DNA of 63,288 bases, the filler included, from Octopus bimaculoides (lineage: Eukaryota): NCBI RefSeq assembly GCF_001194135.2. It is 8 parts of 7 records of this genome, joined end to end, with 100 filler letters (N's around TTAATTAATTAA, not from the genome) between each part and the next. Parts side by side here need not be neighbours in the genome. Positions count along the whole stretch, not along the records: positions 38,551 to 55,518 come from NC_068983.1; 7 more parts are not named here. One strand, given 5' to 3'. Below are positions 38,846 to 54,550 of this stretch, piece by piece; position 1 is the stretch's first letter; each line of letters starts with the position of its first letter. Below the pieces are notes generated by a model. The model worked only from the letters and a program-made list of their open reading frames with translations. It searched no databases and had not been told where the DNA came from. The position numbers and the translations under genes are program-made.

Positions 38846-41749
38846 GTAAATTCCACCTATATATATATATATATCCTGCCACTCTCTCCAGCTAACGTGT
38901 CTCTGTAAGATCTTCCGTTGCATAAAAACGAAAGACAATATCCTAATATTACTCACAGTTTTCATAAGCATTGTTTGCGCAAAACACCTTCATATTTTTT
39001 CTATTTCCCCACGAAAAACATTAAGATCATCGACTGCACAACATTTTACCAGTAGGTAAAGCAGTAGTGTTAGGAAATCTACTCCAGAACTACGTGGTTT
39101 GGAGTTCACTTCCACTCAGCAGTACATTGAGATTTGTTTTGTTTCGTTTTTCTGTCGCCCATCGTCTCTTATTAATCAGAGAGTTCTGGCTTAAAGTTTG
39201 GTAGACGGAGACTGATTGGAAGTTGGTCATGGCAACTGTTCCTGTTCTTCAATAATCTGCCTCTCACACCGACCACAACCCGATTATTCGAGTAAATATT
39301 GTGTCATTGTGTCTCAAGAAAACTTTTCCCTCCTCTACCACTGCATTGACAGAAACCCTGTAAAGGGTGGCCGACCCAACCTCCACTGCTGCCTCAACCA
39401 TATTTAAAACAAGGTAAGTTGATAATAAAAACTGGAACGAGATACAGGATTAGGCTTTTGGGAATTTCGAAATATGACCAAAATCACATTTATATTTTTT
39501 TTATATATAGCTGTGTGTGTTTGTGTGCGTACGTAACATTTCATCTCAAGCTGCCCAGCGATCACTTCGACAACTGACGCGTGGCACACTGTGCCCCTGT
39601 TCTGACAAAGTCGATAGATTTGATGGAAGGAATGAGCTAATGTGTGGCACGAACATTTGATCACTATAATATATACACATATATATATGTACATATATAT
39701 ATATATACATACACACATACGCATACATACATATATACATGAGTAATATATGCATACATGTGTGTGAGTGTGTGTGTGTGTGAGTGTGTGTGTGTGTACA
39801 TACATTCACACACACACTGAGATTTGATGAAATTTACTTGAGAGGAGTGTGTAAGGAGATACCCAGTGATTGAATCAGATAAAACTGATATATTACTAAT
39901 TTTATCACCACTATCACCATTATCATCACCATCATCATCATCATCATCATCATCAGTAGTAGTAGTAGTAGTTTTATTAGTATCATCATTACCATTGTTC
40001 CGAATGAACAATTCCTTGTGGAGACAGTAAAAGTTTAGGAAAACAGTATAACATTGCAGAAAAAAACAGTACATTTTACGAGCGCATATGTTCTTATCTA
40101 CACGCACGCACACATATTATATATGTGTGTGAGCATGCGTGCGTGCATGTGCGTGTGTGTGTGTGTATGTATGTGTGCGTGAATGCACGCACATGTGTAT
40201 ATATCTATATATATTTACAAACGCACAGACGAGCACATATACATATTTCCCTGGATATTTAGAAGATACATATTATGTGTGTATGTTTGTGTGCGTGGGT
40301 GTATGTGTGTGCGTGTGTGTGTGTGTCTATATGTGTGTTTATATACATATGCATACACACACACTACTTTTGGCGAGATCATTAAACAGATATCTGGGTT
40401 GCTTATTTTTTCTTTTTCATTTTTCTTGTTATATTAATGGATGATAAATGATGGTTATTTTTTTTTATATATATATTTTCGCGACTGAAAGCGTAACGAA
40501 ACGGCCATAACAAACCATTCCATAATATTATACACTTCGGAATAACTTTATCGTTAATTTTCACCAGTTCTTATCTCGAAAGATTGTTATAACAATGATC
40601 TTCACAACATCTCATCTAGTTTCGACTGATAAAATTCTATATTCCCTACAAGTGGCAACACCTTTCGTTTTCATTTTGTTTCACAACCCCGGACGAATGC
40701 CAGTGGTATACATGTGTGTGTATGTGTGTGTGTGCGTCTGCATGTATTTGAGTGGTGCCCACAGAAGCGTGCACACGCACATATATATGCATACACCCAT
40801 GGACAAGAATCTATACTTGTACTTGTATCCATATCTACCTCTGTATCCATCAATCTTCAAATAAATTACATGTATATATATATATATNNNNNNNNNNNNN
40901 NNNNNNNNNNNNNNNNNNNNNNNNNNNNNNNNNNNNNNNNNNNNNNNNNNNNNNNNNNNNNNNNNNNNNNNNNNNNNNNNNNNNNNNNNNNNNNNNNNNN
41001 NNNNNNNNNNNNNNNNNNNNNNNNNNNNNNNNNNNNNNNNNNNNNNNNNNNNNNNNNNNNNNNNNNNNNNNNNNNNNNNNNNNNNNNNNNNNNNNNNNNN
41101 NNNNNNNNNNNNNNNNNNNNNNNNNNNNNNNNNNNNNNNNNNNNNNNNNNNNNNNNNNNNNNNNNNNNNNNNNNNNNNNNNNNNNNNNNNNNNNNNNNNN
41201 NNNNNNNNNNNNNNNNNNNNNNNNNNNNNNNNNNNNNNNNNNNNNNNNNNNNNNNNNNNNNNNNNNNNNNNNNNNNNNNNNNNNNNNNNNNNNNNNNNNN
41301 NNNNNNNNNNNNNNNNNNNNNNNNNNNNNNNNNNNNNNNNNNNNNNNNNNNNNNNNNNNNNNNNNNNNNNNNNNNNNNNNNNNNNNNNNNNNNNNNNNNN
41401 NNNNNNNNNNNNNNNNNNNNNNNNNNNNNNNNNNNNNNNNNNNNNNNNNNNNNNNNNNNNNNNNNNNNNNNNNNNNNNNNNNNNNNNNNNNNNNNNNNNN
41501 NNNNNNNATATATATATATATATATATATACATATATATATTCTATTATTCTATTTTTTAATTATTATAAATCTTTCACTGAGGAGGAAGCCGGTTTTCA
41601 ACAAAGATGCAAGGTTCTATCTTTGGGATGTAGTTAACACAAGCAAATTCACATTTGGAACTTTAGAAAAGTCTTGTATATTGTTATTGTTCCACTCATA
41701 GATTGCATTTGTTATGTACGAATTAGCCGGTCGATTTCTCCTTCTGAAA

Positions 41750-42300
41750 ATCCCAGTTTATCCAGATTCTCCTTTAAGCATTTACTAACAAAACCTAGTG
41801 CTCCAATTATTATAGGACTATCAATATGAATTCATAGTCTGAATATAGAAGCTGGAGGTTTCGAAGCAGTTGTACATAGACATCCTCATTTTCTTTGACT
41901 TTCAATGGGATATTTATATCTGCAGGGCACCTGACCTGCATGATTCTACATACGACTGCCTCTCCGTTCCAAACGACAATATTCGGTCTCTTATGTTTAC
42001 TTTTGACAGAAGTTTTAATAGGAATATTCCACCAGTATTCCTTGAGTAGGTGTTTATGAATGTATTCCATAACAGAGGGATTTTCTAAGTTTATTTCAGG
42101 ACAATCTTTCTTGCGGATGACATTGTAAAACGTTTTAACGACAGAATCATGCCGCATAGGGAGGTAGTACCGTGACGACGTTTTAGGACAGTTGCTAATC
42201 ACATGCGTGATGCCTTCCACAGAAACGTGATATAGCCTACACATGCGGTTGCACCTTGGGATAACAAGAGCGCCACTGTCTCTCTTGTTCACCAGGTACT
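41750..42300 (-). mobile_element. RLE-type (R4/Dong-like) non-LTR retrotransposon C-terminal fragment
   Basis: Degenerate CCHC knuckle CRLY..EGITHVISNC, RHD, and RPNIVVW..CPAD nuclease-like motif; PIIIGALG follows after a frameshift. Confidence 0.85.
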
Positions 42301-42691: not shown

Positions 42692-43720
42692 NNNNNNNNN
42701 NNNNNNNNNNNNNNNNNNNNNNNNNNNNNNNNNNNNNNNNNNNNNNNNNNNNNNNNNNNNNNNNNNNNNNNNNNNNNNNNNNNNNNNNNNNNNNNNNNNN
42801 NNNNNNNNNNNNNNNNNNNNNNNNNNNNNNNNNNNNNNNNNNNNNNNNNNNNNNNNNNNNNNNNNNNNNNNNNNNNNNNNNNNNNNNNNNNNNNNNNNNN
42901 NNNNNNNNNNNNNNNNNNNNNNNNNNNNNNNNNNNNNNNNNNNNNNNNNNNNNNNNNNNNNNNNNNNNNNNNNNNNNNNNNNNNNNNNNNNNNNNNNNNN
43001 NNNNNNNNNNNNNNNNNNNNNNNNNNNNNNNNNNNNNNNNNNNNNNNNNNNNNNNNNNNNNNNNNNNNNNNNNNNNNNNNNNNNNNNNNNNNNNNNNNNN
43101 NNNNNNNNNNNNNNNNNNNNNNNNNNNNNNNNNNNNNNNNNNNNNNNNNNNNNNNNNNNNNNNNNNNNNNNNNNNNNNNNNNNNNNNNNNNNNNNNNNNN
43201 NNNNNNNNNNNNNNNNNNNNNNNNNNNNNNNNNNNNNNNNNNNNNNNNNNNNNNNNNNNNNNNNNNNNNNNNNNNNNNNNNNNNNNNNNNNNNNNNNNNN
43301 NNNNNNNNNNNNNNNNNNNNNNNNNNNNNNNNNNNNNNNNNNNNNNNNNNNNNNNNNNNNNNNNNNNNNNNNNNNNNNNNNNNNNNNNNNNNNNNNNNNN
43401 NNNNNNNNNNNNNNNNNNNNNNNNNNNNNNNNNNNNNNNNNNNNNNNNNNNNNNNNNNTATATATATATATATATGTATGTATATATATTACATAGTTTA
43501 TTATTCAAGCTGCCAAAGCACCACAAAAAATAACACCTATTGAGTTTTCCCGTTCGCCGACGATTCAGAATCACAACCGTCCGACAAACGGGAACGTGAA
43601 ACTCTGAGTAGCAACTTTGTGTGATGTTTCTGTAGCTTTAATAATAAAATATATTACTCTACCACCAGTATTCTAGTACTATTTTTTCTCACCTTGTTTC
43701 ACATTTATGTGCTTACTTTG

Positions 43721-43756
<36 letters not shown>

Positions 43757-44431
43757 CATTGAAGCACATAGTCTGTTTATGAATTATACACCTGGGGTCA
43801 AACATATTGTACGACATTGCAAGATTTTCATTTCGGAGAACATTTCTTGATTTTTTCGAATGTATATATTCGATAGATTGTTATCTGTTTGAATTCTATA
43901 AACTTGTACATTCTCATCTACTTTTGACTTTCTTGCATTCACACGTTTATCGTATGCGTACATATATAAAAGTACTTGCGAGTACATTTGCAGGCTAACT
44001 TGCATATATGCGCAAATATACGCCCTTAGACGAAGAAGAATAAACTAAATGCTGTTCAACATGAATTATTGATTTATTAAAATTGACTTCACCTCAGAAT
44101 GAAGTAATCAAATGCCTAACGGCAATATCCACCGATTCCGTATGTGGGGGTGAGAGTCCATTGTGAAAAATAAGCTCTCTATTATAGAAAAGACTTTTTT
44201 TTTCCTGCAGGAAAAAGCACTTCTGTGAGTATGTCATCAGCATACACACACGTATGTATGTATGTATGTATGTATGTATGTACATAAATATACAGACATA
44301 TTTATGTGGGAATACANNNNNNNNNNNNNNNNNNNNNNNNNNNNNNNNNNNNNNNNNNNNNNNNNNNNNNNNNNNNNNNNNNNNNNNNNNNNNNNNNNNN
44401 NNNNNNNNNNNNNNNNNNNNNNNNNNNNNNN

Positions 44432-47400: not shown

Positions 47401-48104
47401 TAATCATTATTACCACTACTACCATCATCATCATTATCATCACTGTTATCATCACTGTTATCATCATCATCATCATCATCATCCAATGTTTGTTGTTTCA
47501 CTGCTGTCATGGGTCGGACGGATGGCCATACCAGTAAAACACCAGCAACAAAAGAACAATTTTAGAACTAAAAACCTACAACAACAAAAACAGCAAACAC
47601 GACGGTAACAATCACAACAATAAAAGAATAACAGTAATAATATTAATAATAATGATAATAATAAGTAACAACAGCAATAGAAACAACGAAAACACAAAAT
47701 TACAACAATAACGACTTCTTTTTTTTTTTCTTTTTTTCTCGTGATTTCTAATCTTAAAGTTCGCTGATAGTTTTAACACTTTTTTCTCTTTTTCTTTTCA
47801 GAAATTCTTCCCAGAATGCGATGTTGTTATATTTTCATAAAGTCTTCTCCCTAAACTTCTAAAGAAGTGCATTTAGAATTTCTAGAATTATCGACGGAAG
47901 AACTCCTACCACTAAACCCTTTCATTACACCCGGGCAGTTGAATCTTTCTCCAGCATGAAGCAAGTCTTTAAAGCAGAACGTTGCCAAACTCCGCATCTA
48001 ATAAACACAACCTTTTGTATTATGAAATAAAAAAATTCTTGAAGAGCACTGTAAATACTCACTTTCTAGCTTATGATTTAAATGTATAAATCAACAAATT
48101 ATTA

Positions 48105-48107
48105 TTA

Positions 48108-48177
<70 letters not shown>

Positions 48178-48271
48178 CATCATTATTATTATTATTATTA
48201 TTATCATTATCCTCATCATAAGTATTAGTATTAGTATTATTGTTGTTGTTGTTGTTATTATCGTTATTATT

Positions 48272-48306
<35 letters not shown>

Positions 48307-48308
48307 TC
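48105..48308 (+). repeat. Representative microsatellite, (ATT)n. Dozens of (TA)n, (CA)n, (TACA)n, (GA)n, (AAT)n, (CAA)n, (TAC)n and (GAA)n tracts occur across the window, mostly flanking gaps
   Basis: Direct reading, e.g. 3708-3845, 21570-21635, 22255-22312, 38325-38450, 48865-49005, 53385-53490. Confidence 0.99.
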
Positions 48309-48833: not shown

Positions 48834-48955
<122 letters not shown>

Positions 48956-48974
48956 TGTGTGTGTATGTGTGTGT

Positions 48975-49005
<31 letters not shown>

Positions 49006-49730: not shown

Positions 49731-50784
49731 CATTATTAACTTCGAATAAGGTGTTAAAATGGCAAGGCATTAGGTTGTACAGATAAGAGACTAAGCTCGT
49801 TCACAATTAAAAGTTTAGGTGGAATGAAATTTGCATGAATGATGATTTGGTTACATAATTTATTATGATTACGAATAATAATTAACATTATTAGAAGATA
49901 TTGTCACCTACTTAGCAATTTCATTTGATATATGATATATAATATATATATATATATANNNNNNNNNNNNNNNNNNNNNNNNNNNNNNNNNNNNNNNNNN
50001 NNNNNNNNNNNNNNNNNNNNNNNNNNNNNNNNNNNNNNNNNNNNNNNNNNNNNNNNNNNNNNNNNNNNNNNNNNNNNNNNNNNNNNNNNNNNNNNNNNNN
50101 NNNNNNNNNNNNNNNNNNNNNNNNNNNNNNNNNNNNNNNNNNNNNNNNNNNNNNNNNNNNNNNNNNNNNNNNNNNNNNNNNNNNNNNNNNNNNNNNNNNN
50201 NNNNNNNNNNNNNNNNNNNNNNNNNNNNNNNNNNNNNNNNNNNNNNNNNNNNNNNNNNNNNNNNNNNNNNNNNNNNNNNNNNNNNNNNNNNNNNNNNNNN
50301 NNNNNNNNNNNNNNNNNNNNNNNNNNNNNNNNNNNNNNNNNNNNNNNNNNNNNNNNNNNNNNNNNNNNNNNNNNNNNNNNNNNNNNNNNNNNNNNNNNNN
50401 NNNNNNNNNNNNNNNNNNNNNNNNNNNNNNNNNNNNNNNNNNNNNNNNNNNNNNNNNNNNNNNNNNNNNNNNNNNNNNNNNNNNNNNNNNNNNNNNNNNN
50501 NNNNNNNNATATATATATACATACATGTGTATGTATGTATGTATGTATGTATGTATGTATGCATATACATAGGCTTATAAATATCTTTTTGAAAGTGTAT
50601 ATTTTAAGTATGCATATATATAGGGAAATTTTCCGATATTCTGAAAATGTTATCTACTGTGGTTATGAATTTTTCTTAGCATTTCTCTTTGTATGTTTTT
50701 TTTTTTTTAATATTTTTTTGCTTTCTTTTGGTGTTCTCTTTCGAAATTTCCGTGTAGAAACTTCCAAGTTATTTGTAGACCTTT

Positions 50785-51064
50785 TCAAAAAATTGTCACC
50801 GAATTTTCTTTGAATGCTATGTTTTCAAAGATCGAACTCTCTGAACCTCTAAAACTTTCCTTCTTTCTTAACACTGTACTTTCTAGTTTTTCTAATGTGT
50901 TGTCGTTGAGAATATCTGATTTCGTTTCAGAGAAATGATCATCAGAATCCGTCAAGGAATCTGTATGAAGTAACGTAAATGTAGTCCAAGTATTCAAATC
51001 TCGGTCGTAGTTAGCTTTATAGTCTCCAACAGATGTCACCTCTATCTCGTCAACGGCTTCGATA

Positions 51065-51095
<31 letters not shown>

Positions 51096-52062
51096 TTTCG
51101 TGGATTATATCGTTGTGAATGTCTTCGTGGTCGCTACTATCGAAGCTGTCACTTAAATGTTTGGTGCTTTCTAAAGTGGTTTCCATTAGAATTTCGTAAA
51201 CGCTACAATAGCTATCACCGGTATTTTGGCAACACAAGTGGAAAATATCTATGAAAGCCAGCTGTGGACTAAAGATATCATCGCTGAGAACGCTGCTAGG
51301 TGTGGTGGACGACAAGATGGAGTGTTTGCTGCAAGAACTAGGAATGGAGTTGCATCGGCTAACATCTGTACTGGTTAGGCTCATCAAAGAAGCCTCCGAA
51401 AGGTCTTCGCAATCTTCTTGCCCTTCTTCGGTAAAATCAGGCCGGAAGTTGCCGTTATCACTCCACGCAGGAGATCGAATATATTCAAATTGTGGGGATG
51501 TGCAACATAGCAAAGGATTGTTTTGGTATGTCGCCATGGTGATGTAAGTCCAGTCGAAGTCTGGGGAAAACTGCAGACCTTCAAACGAATCAGTATTTTG
51601 TTGTTTGAAGACGGCAGCCATATTGTCAGTGGCGACCAAATCACTGGATCTTGTGTCGTAATTATTATCTTCGTTGCTACTGATGCTGCATCTGTTGCTC
51701 ATGTCGACACTGCTACAACTATTATTGTTGTTATTGTTGTTGTTATGACTATTGCTATTCACATTTTGGTTGTTGCCTTTCTTCCAGTAAACCCCATATT
51801 TTTTATCCAGTTTGTTGCTCACACACTCTATCTGGTTGACTAGCACGCGGATATCACCGACGATTCCTTGTAAATTGCCCAGAACATTCTCTAAATTTCC
51901 GACAACATTGCGAACTGATTGCTTAACTAGTCTCTTCTCATTGGCCGATCCTGTTGCCGGGCTGGGATTACAACAATTACCATTTGAACTAAATTTCACC
52001 AACGAACGACTGAAATTATCATTCAACGGTTCCAAAGTCTTTGGTCTTTCCTTCGACTCCAT
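50785..52062 (-). CDS. Uninterrupted 425-aa ORF; N-terminal coiled coil similar to the INSYN1/PRR16(Largen) family, followed by a Ser/Asp/Asn-rich low-complexity region
   Basis: Only long non-microsatellite ORF in the window: ATG at 52062 with an in-frame TGA about 100 nt upstream, TGA at 50785. Residues 46-85 (VKQSVRNVVGNLENVLGNLQGIVGDIRVLVNQIECVSNKL) align without gaps to the PRR16/INSYN1 N-terminal helix as I recall it. Additional exons cannot be excluded. Coding status is well supported; the family call is less certain. Confidence 0.8.
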
Positions 52063-52519
52063 ATTTACTCTATAATTTTTCTGCTGCTGTACTCGTTGTT
52101 CTCTTTTGTAAATGTGGTGCAGATTCTTTCATTCTAGTCTGTAAAAAGTACTTTTTTTTTCTTTCAAATCTCCCAATAAATAACAGAATAGAGAATCTCG
52201 GATGCTTCCTTTGGGTGGAAATGAAAGCATGAACCGACAAATGTCTTCTATCCTTTTCGTAGTAAAAAAAAAAAAACCAAAGCAGAATATCGAAAAGAAA
52301 GGAGTGTTGAAATGGCGTTCAGGACAGACAGCACCTTATTGATTCTCCAAGCTGGGACGTTGATGGTAATAATAGATGCTGAGGTTCAAATCATCTCTGT
52401 TATTCCTTTCAATGTAAAAACCTCACGACAGACTGAAATGGAATAAGAAAGTGAAATATTAGATTTAATGTAGACTGTGAAGAGATTAATGGTAAAAACA
52501 ACAACAAGAAGAATGATGC

Positions 52520-53382: not shown

Positions 53383-53422
<40 letters not shown>

Positions 53423-53438
53423 GACGACGACGACGACG

Positions 53439-53493
<55 letters not shown>

Positions 53494-54236: not shown

Positions 54237-54550
54237 NNNNNNNNNNNNNNNNNNNNNNNNNNNNNNNNNNNNNNNNNNNNNNNNNNNNNNNNNNNNNNNN
54301 NNNNNNNNNNNNNNNNNNNNNNNNNNNNNNNNNNNNNNNNNNNNNNNNNNNNNNNNNNNNNNNNNNNNNNNNNNNNNNNNNNNNNNNNNNNNNNNNNNNN
54401 NNNNNNNNNNNNNNNNNNNNNNNNNNNNNNNNNNNNNNNNNNNNNNNNNNNNNNNNNNNNNNNNNNNNNNNNNNNNNNNNNNNNNNNNNNNNNNNNNNNN
54501 NNNNNNATATATTCATAACATATACATGTGTATGTCTAGCAACCCCATAG

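What the first reader, a model, noticed from the sequence alone, without database searches (positions are those of the whole stretch)
50785..52062. Possible invertebrate member of the INSYN1/PRR16(Largen) family
Seen: a heptad-patterned helix at aa 46-85 (nt 51808-51927) and the motif PDFDWTYIT. Against human sequences recalled from memory, it matches ungapped at 13/40 residues with PRR16 and 11/40 with INSYN1, and INSYN1 has a similar PDDWTTAT motif after the helix. The vertebrate RERVRF motif is absent. INSYN1 is an inhibitory postsynaptic protein and Largen a cell-size regulator, both known mainly from vertebrates. Inference: the family may predate the protostome-deuterostome split, and this gene may be neural.
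Basis: partly seen in the sequence, partly recalled or inferred. Interest (0 to 1): 0.7.

Follow-up and report, generated by a model that had tools for sequence, protein, structure and literature searches.

The report
Octopus relative of synaptic protein INSYN1
This octopus gene encodes a mostly disordered protein whose single long N-terminal helix is related to the helix that anchors the vertebrate inhibitory-synapse protein INSYN1 (and probably Largen) to the dystroglycan complex; it belongs to an unnamed family found across bilaterian invertebrates, so this helix module is much older than vertebrates.

Summary
Window 50785-52062 (-) is an intronless 425-aa ORF in Octopus bimaculoides with a perfect heptad helix (aa 46-85) and PDFDWTYIT (aa 167-175).

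- The protein belongs to an unnamed, Pfam-less family. Members were identified in molluscs, an annelid, echinoderms and a hemichordate.
- A 56-position helix profile built only from these proteins scores real vertebrate INSYN1 orthologues at 41-49 bits (E 3e-8 to 7e-6, scaled to 1.8 billion sequences). The match is ungapped.
- Controls: PDB best 16.4 bits; shuffled helices at most 9.7 bits; hhalign 96.8%, E 2e-10. The link survives restriction to confirmed taxa.

- The protein does not match Pfam DUF4589. That test is blind, because the model starts after most of the helix.
- RERVRF and the INSYN1 C-terminal motif are absent.
- The PDFDWTYIT/PDDWTTAT pairing fails a profile test. A weak alternative is NTWTTFT...SDILNDN versus DDWTTAT...DILSD.

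In mouse InSyn1, aa 1-60 bind alpha1-syntrophin and beta-dystrobrevin. I therefore infer that the octopus helix is a docking module for the dystroglycan complex. Neural expression was not tested.

The parts
50785..52062 (-). Complete intronless CDS, 425 aa plus stop, of an uncharacterised Octopus bimaculoides gene
   Evidence: One search lists the ORF. It is 99% identical to O. vulgaris/O. sinensis proteins, 77-80% to Argonauta hians and 61-70% to a third cephalopod-like protein of unnamed origin (P0003). It maps to GCA_001194135.2 CM046603.1 as a single called gene. Start residues M1 and E2 are invariant in the four aligned sequences.
51778..51945 (-). N-terminal amphipathic helix, aa 40-95. 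It has a perfect a/d heptad at aa 46-85, and Gly at aa 55, 62 and 69, one heptad apart
   Evidence: AlphaFold2 predicts a helix at 40-95 with pLDDT >90. This is the best-conserved block of the family.
51805..51948 (-). Segment homologous to INSYN1 residues 18-65, which lie within the aa 1-60 region that binds the dystroglycan complex in mouse InSyn1 (aa 39-86 of the octopus protein)
   Evidence: BLASTP E=1e-7. The family helix profile scores INSYN1 at 41-49 bits. hhalign gives 96.8% probability and E=2.1e-10. Function of InSyn1 aa 1-60: PMC6944460.
51709..51759 (-). Asn-rich low-complexity linker, aa 102-118; a lineage-specific insertion
   Evidence: P0003 lacks a 37-column stretch of the alignment around this tract. 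pLDDT is <50.
51538..51564 (-). PDFDWTYIT motif, aa 167-175; family consensus SPDxDWSYL
   Evidence: Invariant in cephalopods. Present in 22 of 50 family members; those of known origin are molluscs. A profile of the motif does not match INSYN1.
51265..51399 (-). Conserved Ser/Thr/Cys-rich block SEASLMSLTSTD.SRC.SIPSSCS.HSILS..TTPSSV.SDDIFSP, aa 222-266
   Evidence: Nearly invariant across the four cephalopod sequences. Predicted disordered. No counterpart found in INSYN1.
51157..51210 (-). YCSVYEILMETTLE block, a short second helix, aa 285-302; family consensus YCGxYExxMExxLE
   Evidence: Y289 is nearly invariant in the 50-sequence alignment. AlphaFold2 predicts a helix at 288-302 with pLDDT 78-88.
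51064..51096 (-). Poly-Asp tract, aa 323-333, encoded by a 9-bp tandem repeat
   Evidence: Tandem Repeats Finder row 51065-51095, period 9.
50965..51009 (-). YDRDLNTWTTFTLLH block, aa 352-366; the family signature together with SDILNDN
   Evidence: W359 is nearly invariant family-wide. The block is present in molluscs, echinoderms and a hemichordate. It aligns weakly with INSYN1 DDWTTAT.
50899..50919 (-). SDILNDN motif, aa 382-388, starting 24 residues after W359
   Evidence: Found 19-31 residues after the Trp in 26 members. It aligns with INSYN1 SDILSD, which lies 31 residues after its Trp. The match is weak: P from 1e-4 to 0.1.
50809..50853 (-). C-terminal FRGSESSIFENIAFK block, aa 404-418; seen only in the cephalopod sequences
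   Evidence: Invariant in the four cephalopod sequences. Not seen in the other members inspected.

Best explanation
This is a real, expressed-looking, intronless octopus gene. Its product is an intrinsically disordered adaptor-type protein with one long N-terminal amphipathic helix (aa 40-95), followed by a disordered tail carrying short conserved motifs. It belongs to a previously unnamed family with no Pfam model. The family is defined by the helix, YCGxYE..LE, YDRDxNTWTxY and SDILNDN, and was identified here in molluscs, an annelid, echinoderms and a hemichordate.

Shown: the helix is homologous to the N-terminal helix of vertebrate INSYN1, and of Largen/PRR16 according to a recalled sequence.

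Inferred: the family is most likely the invertebrate counterpart of the vertebrate INSYN1/PRR16 pair. That pair kept the helix, and perhaps the W-T-T...DIL block, and has a different tail (RERVRF, TQTV..KSTQT).

Inferred mechanism: in mouse InSyn1 this same region (aa 1-60) binds alpha1-syntrophin and beta-dystrobrevin and targets the protein to inhibitory synapses. The octopus helix therefore probably docks the protein onto the dystrophin/dystrobrevin/syntrophin (dystroglycan) complex, possibly by helix-helix packing against their coiled coils. The tail motifs would recruit other partners.
For: Real gene under selection: cephalopod orthologues are 61-99% identical, with invariant blocks separated by variable linkers.

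Family: an exhaustive profile search found 48 proteins that share the same ordered modules. Named members are from Haliotis, Ylistrum, Aplysia, Babylonia, Paralvinella, Diadema, Amphiura, Acanthaster and Ptychodera.

Helix homology:
- The invertebrate-only helix profile scores 120 real INSYN1 proteins. The highest scores are 45-49 bits, and six diverse orthologues from mammal to fish score 41.5-48.2 bits. E is 3e-8 to 7e-6 at Z=1.84e9, ungapped over about 47 positions, with bias 0.2-0.5 bits.
- The same profile against 177,635 PDB sequences gives at most 16.4 bits.
- hhalign of the full family against 26 INSYN1 sequences: probability 96.8%, E=2.1e-10.
- The reverse INSYN1 helix profile hits family members at E from 4e-6 to 1e-3 at Z=1.84e9.
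- Direct BLASTP: E=1e-7.
- Shuffle controls: 0 of 5000 in each class reach the real score.
- The result holds with taxonomically confirmed members only (32-44 bits) and with full-architecture members only (29-37 bits).
- Recalled PRR16 scores 43.1 bits.

Architecture: AlphaFold2 gives one confident helix plus a disordered tail. InSyn1 is described the same way: the only structural feature is a predicted coiled coil in the first 60 aa (PMC6944460).

Function of the homologous region: deleting InSyn1 aa 1-60 abolishes synaptic localisation and binding to alpha1-syntrophin and beta-dystrobrevin (PMC6944460).

Collinear weak second block: NTWTxYT...SDILND against DDWTTAT...SDILSD, in the same order and with similar spacing.
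Against: Only about 50 residues are demonstrably homologous.

The octopus protein does not match Pfam DUF4589. It lacks RERVRF and the INSYN1 C-terminal motif.

The second block is not significant on its own (hhalign P=0.17; HMM P from 1e-4 to 0.1).

Coiled-coil helices can converge. Heptad-preserving shuffles average 14.5 bits and reach 42 bits, so register composition explains part of the score.

Counterpart (orthology) status was not tested. No synteny could be obtained, because no neighbours lie within 10 kb. I could not check whether invertebrates also have true DUF4589 proteins, or whether vertebrates have a full-architecture member.

Binding to the dystroglycan complex is inferred from mouse data only. 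No expression data were available. The PRR16 helix sequence was recalled from memory and only residues 53-304 were validated.
Confidence: 0.72

Rival explanations
1. Module-level homology only. The helix is an ancient shared module, but the octopus family and INSYN1/PRR16 are separate, paralogous families, not counterparts of each other. The octopus protein may use the helix for a different partner, or simply for self-association.
For: Outside the helix nothing aligns significantly. The families' other conserved blocks are mutually exclusive. No family member reaches Pfam DUF4589. Echinoderm and hemichordate members, which are deuterostomes, look like the invertebrate family and not like intermediates towards INSYN1.
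Against: In both families the helix lies in the N-terminal part of most members and is followed by a disordered tail. The phyletic distribution appears complementary as far as it could be seen: all 120 listed INSYN1 hits are vertebrate or unnamed, and all named family hits are invertebrate. There is a weak collinear W-T-T...DIL block.
Confidence: 0.2
2. Convergence or chance. The resemblance is the generic similarity of two amphipathic heptad helices, with no common ancestry.
For: The region is short and heptad-patterned. Heptad-register-preserving shuffles of the INSYN1 helix still average 14.5 bits and reach 42.3 bits. The cephalopod-only profile gives INSYN1 only 6-14 bits.
Against: The real INSYN1 helix beats all 5000 heptad-preserving shuffles. 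The best PDB sequence, from a set rich in coiled coils, scores 16.4 bits against 41-49 bits. E is <=7e-6 on a 1.8-billion-sequence scale in one direction and down to 4e-6 in the other. Shared non-heptad features include Gly after the first hydrophobic pair, L-E, Q-I-D and T. The exhaustive cephalopod-profile search returned only 48 proteins, not a flood of coiled coils.
Confidence: 0.05
3. The ORF is not a functional gene but a chance or decayed reading frame in repeat-rich DNA.
For: The surrounding DNA is rich in microsatellites and assembly gaps. The protein contains poly-Asn and poly-Asp tracts.
Against: The full-length frame is conserved with invariant blocks across octopuses, Argonauta and a third cephalopod-like protein, and the same architecture occurs in other phyla. 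Orthologues occur on many transcript-sized contigs of 1.4-1.8 kb. RefSeq annotates the gene in O. sinensis.
Confidence: 0.01

Closest known systems
INSYN1 (inhibitory synaptic factor 1; C15orf59; Pfam DUF4589/PF15252)
   Same: Both have a homologous amphipathic helix in the N-terminal part: octopus aa 39-86 against INSYN1 18-65, ungapped, sharing hhGxLExhL..L..V...L..hV.QID..T. Both have a single helix followed by a disordered, Ser-rich and acidic tail. There may also be a collinear W-T-T-x-T...(24-31 aa)...DIL[NS]D block. The homologous segment lies within the region of mouse InSyn1 that binds alpha1-syntrophin and beta-dystrobrevin (PMC6944460).
   Different: The octopus protein does not match the Pfam DUF4589 model. 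It lacks RERVRFSDKVLYHALCCDD, PDYRLMNGG..PNGP and the C-terminal TQTVSDKSTQTVLPY. It has blocks that INSYN1 lacks (SPDxDWSYL, YCGxYE..LE, the YDRDxN context of NTWT) and is longer (425 aa against about 290). The octopus helix has Gly at three successive heptads, while INSYN1 has only the first. No functional data exist for the octopus protein.
Largen / PRR16 (Pfam DUF4589), a regulator of mammalian cell size
   Same: The helix, in a sequence recalled from memory, scores 43.1 bits against the invertebrate helix profile. Only residues 53-304 of that recalled sequence were validated, by Pfam.
   Different: As recalled, PRR16 has no W-T-T or DILSD block and a proline-rich tail with RERVRF. The octopus protein is not proline-rich.
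Unnamed bilaterian family: 'uncharacterized protein' entries such as Haliotis LOC124143732, Aplysia LOC101845368, Ylistrum LOC132543290, Acanthaster LOC110987929, Ptychodera XP_070543606 and Paralvinella KAK2141002
   Same: The architecture and module order are shared: helix, then YCGxYE..LE, YxRxxNTWTxY and SDILNDN. SPDxDWSYL is also present in 22 members; those of known origin are molluscs. The CDS is intronless in all four genomes examined.
   Different: Cephalopods add poly-Asn and poly-Asp linkers and their own C-terminal FRGSESSIFENIAFK block. Some members of other lineages instead end in a NYSWRTVIEP motif. Echinoderm members lack SPDxDWSYL and SDILNDN.

Membership tests
INSYN1/PRR16 (Pfam DUF4589, PF15252) | Score above the Pfam gathering threshold (27 bits) on the PF15252 model | tested here: not met
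   No hit at E<=10 for the full protein or for its N-terminal 148-aa segment. None of 50 family members hits it at E<=0.01. Caveat: the model starts at residue 52-53 of INSYN1/PRR16, so it omits most of the helix.
INSYN1/PRR16 (Pfam DUF4589, PF15252) | N-terminal amphipathic helix (INSYN1 aa ~20-65) with the signature hhGxLExhLxxLKxVxxxLxxVVxQIDxLT | tested here: met
   The family helix profile scores real INSYN1 at 41-49 bits, E 3e-8 to 7e-6 at Z=1.84e9. hhalign gives 96.8% probability and E=2.1e-10. BLASTP gives E=1e-7.
INSYN1/PRR16 (Pfam DUF4589, PF15252) | RERVRF[SN][DE]KV.YH motif, invariant in 26 INSYN1 orthologues | tested here: not met
   A regular-expression search finds no RERVRF-like motif in the octopus protein. 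The helix-masked profile-profile comparison aligns nothing to it. Its invariance in INSYN1 is shown.
INSYN1/PRR16 (Pfam DUF4589, PF15252) | C-terminal TQTVSDKSTQTVLPY motif (INSYN1) | tested here: not met
   Absent from the octopus sequence and from the family alignment.
INSYN1/PRR16 (Pfam DUF4589, PF15252) | Post-helix block DDWTTAT...(about 31 aa)...DILSDSWEF (INSYN1) | tested here: inconclusive
The best helix-masked alignment pairs it with NTWTTFT...SDILND, at P=0.17. A dedicated HMM gives P from 1.3e-4 to 0.14 for 25 of 26 INSYN1 orthologues, and the domains printed align at the same site.
INSYN1/PRR16 (Pfam DUF4589, PF15252) | Binding to dystroglycan-complex components through the helix, and localisation at inhibitory synapses (INSYN1); cell-size regulation (Largen) | not testable with these tools
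   These are experimental properties. The mouse data are in PMC6944460.
Unnamed bilaterian helix/NTWT/SDILNDN family | Helix with consensus VKxxVRxVVGxLENVLGELxxVVGDLxxLVxQIDxVTxKID in the N-terminal part | tested here: met
   Octopus aa 40-95. 49 of 50 members match the helix HMM.
Unnamed bilaterian helix/NTWT/SDILNDN family | YCGxYExxMExxLE block | tested here: met
   Octopus aa 285-298, YCSVYEILMETTLE. Y289 is nearly invariant family-wide.
Unnamed bilaterian helix/NTWT/SDILNDN family | Y[DN]RxxNTWTx[YF] followed 19-31 residues later by SDILNDN | tested here: met
   Octopus aa 352-366 and 382-388, spacing 24. W359 is nearly invariant.
Unnamed bilaterian helix/NTWT/SDILNDN family | Intronless coding sequence | tested here: met
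   In each of octopus, Acanthaster, Ptychodera and the unidentified organism of P0016, the called gene's length equals the CDS length.

The most novel reading that the evidence does not exclude
The INSYN1/Largen helix is an ancient, bilaterian-wide docking module for the dystrobrevin/syntrophin arm of the dystroglycan complex. The invertebrate helix/NTWT/SDILNDN proteins represent the ancestral form. Vertebrate INSYN1 and Largen would then derive from it by loss of the middle of the protein. One speculative route is a deletion joining a PDxDW-type motif to the WTTxT...DILxD block, which would produce INSYN1's PDDWTTAT...DILSD. A new RERVRF tail would have been gained as well. On this reading, the octopus protein organises the dystroglycan complex at inhibitory synapses or neuromuscular junctions of a nervous system that evolved its complexity independently.
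Probability: 0.3. Interest if true: 0.7.

Novelty: new variant of a known kind. Interest (0 to 1): 0.5.

Why it matters
InSyn1 was described as having no identifiable domain apart from a predicted N-terminal coiled coil, and its Pfam family (DUF4589) does not even model that helix. NCBI and UniProt label all the invertebrate relatives found here as uncharacterised.

This work shows that the helix is the conserved core of a family spanning molluscs, an annelid, echinoderms, a hemichordate and vertebrates. That has three consequences:
1. It gives a first functional lead for an unannotated invertebrate gene family.
2. It points to the helix as the ancient, selected part of INSYN1 and Largen. This fits the mouse result that the N-terminal region containing it mediates binding to the dystroglycan complex.
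3. It makes a specific question testable in tractable invertebrates (Aplysia, sea urchin, octopus): is coupling of an InSyn1-like adaptor to dystrobrevin or syntrophin an ancestral bilaterian feature?

It also shows a practical gap: the Pfam model boundaries hide this relationship.

Tried and rejected
1. Pfam scans of the full protein, of helix segments and of all 50 family members found nothing relevant. I do not count this as evidence against homology, because the PF15252 model starts after most of the helix.
2. A word-indexed database search with the 56-column helix alignment returned nothing, not even the family's own members. I treat it as a tool failure on a short query.
3. phmmer of the full protein against PDB gave only a poly-Asn artefact at E=0.6.
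4. Synteny: ±10 kb around the octopus, Acanthaster, Ptychodera and P0016 genes contains no annotated neighbour, so orthology could not be tested this way.
6. Literature: no paper in the library mentions DUF4589. Only one paper mentions both INSYN1 and PRR16, and its title and abstract concern a mouse dentate-gyrus transcriptome, not protein evolution; I did not open it. None cites the invertebrate gene identifiers. The PRR16-ABI2 paper has no domain mapping.
7. I did not run a structure-library search, because a single helix plus disordered regions gives meaningless fold matches.
8. Rfam and tRNA scans of the piece found nothing.
9. The 160-aa ORF at 41810-42292 has no Pfam hit.
10. I considered a C-terminal FRGSESSIFENIAF / RERVRFSDKVLYHAL resemblance by eye. 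I dropped it because that octopus block is seen only in the cephalopod sequences and nothing aligned there.
Full report
1. THE OBSERVATION

Window 50785-52062 (minus strand) is a 425-aa ATG-to-stop ORF. It is the only long ORF in the piece that is not made of assembly gaps or microsatellites.

Residues 46-85 map to nt 51808-51927. Hydrophobic residues fall at 46, 50, 53, 57, 60, 64, 67, 71, 74, 78, 81 and 85, a perfect 4-3 heptad. PDFDWTYIT is at aa 167-175. No RERVRF-like motif is present.

The gene is real. The window comes from Octopus bimaculoides assembly GCA_001194135.2, chromosome CM046603.1 (naming the species from the accession rests on my own knowledge). The protein is 99% identical to O. 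vulgaris and O. sinensis proteins, 77-80% to Argonauta hians, and 61-70% to a third cephalopod-like protein of unnamed origin (P0003) that occurs on many transcript-sized contigs. Invariant blocks are separated by variable low-complexity linkers.

2. WHAT THE PROTEIN BELONGS TO

Pfam finds nothing.

An exhaustive HMMER search of 1.84 billion representative proteins with the cephalopod alignment found 48 proteins at E<1e-3. Reading them shows one shared architecture, always in the same order:
- a helix in the N-terminal part, consensus VKxxVRxVVGxLENVLGELxxVVGDLxxLVxQIDxVTxKID;
- in 22 members, SPDxDWSYL (the members of known origin are molluscs);
- YCGxYExxMExxLE;
- Y[DN]RxxNTWTx[YF];
- 19-31 residues further on, SDILNDN.

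The members that carry names are all labelled 'uncharacterized'. They come from gastropods (Haliotis, Aplysia, Babylonia), a scallop (Ylistrum), an annelid (Paralvinella), echinoderms (Diadema, Amphiura, Acanthaster) and a hemichordate (Ptychodera). None of the 50 aligned members hits any relevant Pfam family.

So the octopus gene belongs to an unnamed family that by itself already spans protostomes and deuterostomes. The coding sequence is intronless in all four genomes I could inspect.

AlphaFold2, run with the family alignment, predicts one confident helix at aa 40-95 (pLDDT >90) and a short helix at 288-302 over the YEILME..LE block. The rest has low confidence and is probably disordered.

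3. THE INSYN1/PRR16 LINK

My recalled human PRR16 and INSYN1 match PF15252 at 260 and 338 bits. However, the model begins at residue 52-53 of both proteins, after most of the helix.

I therefore retrieved real INSYN1 orthologues. The recalled human sequence proved 98% identical over its full length to a primate INSYN1, and 120 orthologues from mammals to fish were returned.

Forward test. A 56-position HMM built only from the invertebrate helices (alignment A3) scores these real INSYN1 proteins strongly. The highest scores are 45-49 bits, and six diverse orthologues from mammal to fish score 41.5-48.2 bits. E is 3e-8 to 7e-6 even when scaled to 1.84 billion sequences. The alignment is ungapped over about 47 positions and the bias term is 0.2-0.5 bits.

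Controls:
- The same profile against 177,635 distinct PDB sequences, many of them coiled coils, reaches only 16.4 bits.
- Fully shuffled INSYN1 helices reach at most 9.7 bits.
- Shuffles that keep every residue in its heptad register average 14.5 bits and reach at most 42.3 bits. None of 5000 reaches the real 44.8 bits.
- A profile of taxonomically confirmed invertebrates only (11 sequences) still gives 32-44 bits.
- A profile of members with the full C-terminal architecture only (26 sequences) gives 29-37 bits.

Other directions:
- Reverse: an INSYN1 helix profile hits family members at E from 4e-6 to 1e-3 on the same scale.
- Profile-profile: hhalign of the full-length family against 26 INSYN1 orthologues gives 96.8% probability and E=2.1e-10 over 57 columns.
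- Direct BLASTP of octopus against primate INSYN1: 14/48 identities, 65% positives, no gaps, E=1e-7 for that single comparison.
- Recalled PRR16 scores 43.1 bits. Its helix part was not validated against a database sequence.

The octopus sequence itself is one of the more divergent members. It scores 14.9 bits with the INSYN1 profile, and a cephalopod-only profile gives INSYN1 just 6-14 bits. This explains why INSYN1 did not appear.

I conclude that the helix is homologous.

4. WHAT IS NOT SHARED

With the helix masked, nothing aligns significantly.

INSYN1's invariant blocks have no counterpart in the invertebrate family: RERVRFSDKVLYHALCCDD, PDYRLMNGG..PNGP and TQTVSDKSTQTVLPY. The reverse holds for YCGxYE..LE and SPDxDWSYL.

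A profile of the SPDxDWSYL motif gives P>=0.03 on INSYN1 and aligns elsewhere.

The best residual alignment is a different one. The family's NTWTxYT...SDILND block pairs with INSYN1's DDWTTAT...SDILSD, in the same order after the helix and with similar spacing (24 residues in octopus, 31 in INSYN1, 19-31 across the family). It is weak: hhalign P=0.17, and a dedicated HMM gives P from 1.3e-4 to 0.14 for 25 of 26 orthologues, with the printed alignments at the same site. I treat it as suggestive only.

5. HOW IT MOST LIKELY WORKS

Shown: the protein has one long amphipathic helix and a disordered tail carrying short conserved motifs. The helix is homologous to INSYN1 residues 18-65.

From the literature (PMC6944460):
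- InSyn1 has no recognisable feature except a predicted coiled coil in its first 60 residues.
- Deleting residues 1-60 abolishes its punctate localisation at inhibitory synapses.
- The same deletion abolishes its interaction with alpha1-syntrophin and beta-dystrobrevin of the dystroglycan complex.
- Gephyrin binding does not depend on this region alone.

Inferred: the octopus helix is a docking module for the dystrophin/dystrobrevin/syntrophin complex. From general knowledge, that complex is conserved across bilaterians; I did not test this here. The disordered tail motifs would recruit lineage-specific partners.

One feature is visible directly in the sequence. The hydrophobic face is wide (a, d and the residue after a), and Gly follows at aa 55, 62 and 69, one heptad apart. 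This would suit tight packing against partner helices. That reading is speculative.

My confidence is about 0.9 for helix homology, about 0.55-0.6 for counterpart (co-orthologue) status as against module-only homology, and about 0.4 for binding to the dystroglycan complex.

6. COMPARISON, NOVELTY AND VERDICT

By Pfam's definition the octopus protein is not a DUF4589 member, since three defining features were tested and not met. It does share the functionally mapped N-terminal helix of INSYN1.

I classify it as a new variant of a known kind: an invertebrate family, remote from INSYN1/Largen, that carries the same helix on a different tail.

I found no prior description. No paper in the library mentions DUF4589. 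The only paper naming both INSYN1 and PRR16 concerns, by its title and abstract, a mouse dentate-gyrus transcriptome; I did not open it. All invertebrate members are annotated as uncharacterised.

Neural expression, counterpart status and partner binding remain untested. Interest is moderate (0.5). This is a solid remote-homology result that gives a testable functional lead and pushes the origin of the INSYN1 helix back to the bilaterian ancestor. The mechanistic part is inference.

Noticed in passing
window 51778-51945 (aa 40-95): In the helix, Gly recurs exactly one heptad apart (aa 55, 62, 69), each after a pair of hydrophobic residues (VVG, VLG, IVG). The three-Gly pattern is also the consensus of the invertebrate family (VVGxLENVLGELxxVVGDL). 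INSYN1 keeps only the first Gly. This may indicate unusually tight helix-helix packing.
   Followed up: partly
window 51709-51759 and 51064-51096: The poly-Asn (aa 102-118) and poly-Asp (aa 323-333, a 9-bp tandem repeat) tracts are lineage-specific expansions in linker regions. P0003 lacks a 37-column stretch of the alignment around the Asn tract.
   Followed up: partly
window 52139-52145: About 77 nt upstream of the ATG there is a pyrimidine-rich stretch ending in ...tactttttacAG, which looks like a 3' splice site. The intronless CDS may therefore be preceded by an intron in the 5' UTR. No transcript evidence was examined.
   Followed up: no
window 41810-42292 (-): This is the only other long gap-free ORF found outside the gene and not made of simple repeats (160 aa, GTG start). 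It has no Pfam hit. It could be a degraded mobile-element fragment, but nothing supports that beyond its isolation.
   Followed up: partly
window 40888-41507, 42692-43458, 44317-44431, 49959-50508, 54237-54506: The piece contains five assembly gaps (N runs of 115-767 bases), flanked by TA/TG-type microsatellites. Long simple repeats lie elsewhere, for example (ATT)70 at 48098-48307, (TG)71 at 48864-49005 and (ACT)36 at 53385-53492. The long 'ORFs' listed across these gaps are artefacts.
   Followed up: yes
P0037, P0043, P0044, P0050, P0051 and P0058 (family members, C-termini): A subgroup of the family, including the annelid Paralvinella protein, ends in a conserved [VI]N[YF][SC]WR[TPI][VI][IV][EMK]P motif (for example VNYSWRTVIEP) that the octopus and other mollusc proteins lack. 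Its function is unknown.
   Followed up: no
P0045 (Amphiura filiformis), residues ~14-20: This brittle-star member has GRVRF immediately before the helix, reminiscent of the vertebrate RERVRF motif but in a different position. It is probably coincidence.
   Followed up: no
L001, L002, L003 and L004 (Acanthaster, unidentified ENA organism, Ptychodera, octopus): In all four genomes inspected the family's coding sequence is a single exon, with no Pfam-annotated neighbour within 10 kb. Alternative INSYN1 isoforms that match the query over only about 71% of its length suggest a split CDS in vertebrates, but I did not check this.
   Followed up: partly
Pfam PF15252 (DUF4589) model boundaries: The Pfam model for INSYN1/PRR16 begins at residue 52-53. 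It therefore excludes most of the N-terminal helix that lies in the region mapped for dystroglycan-complex binding in InSyn1. Any search based on this model will miss relatives that share only the helix.
   Followed up: yes
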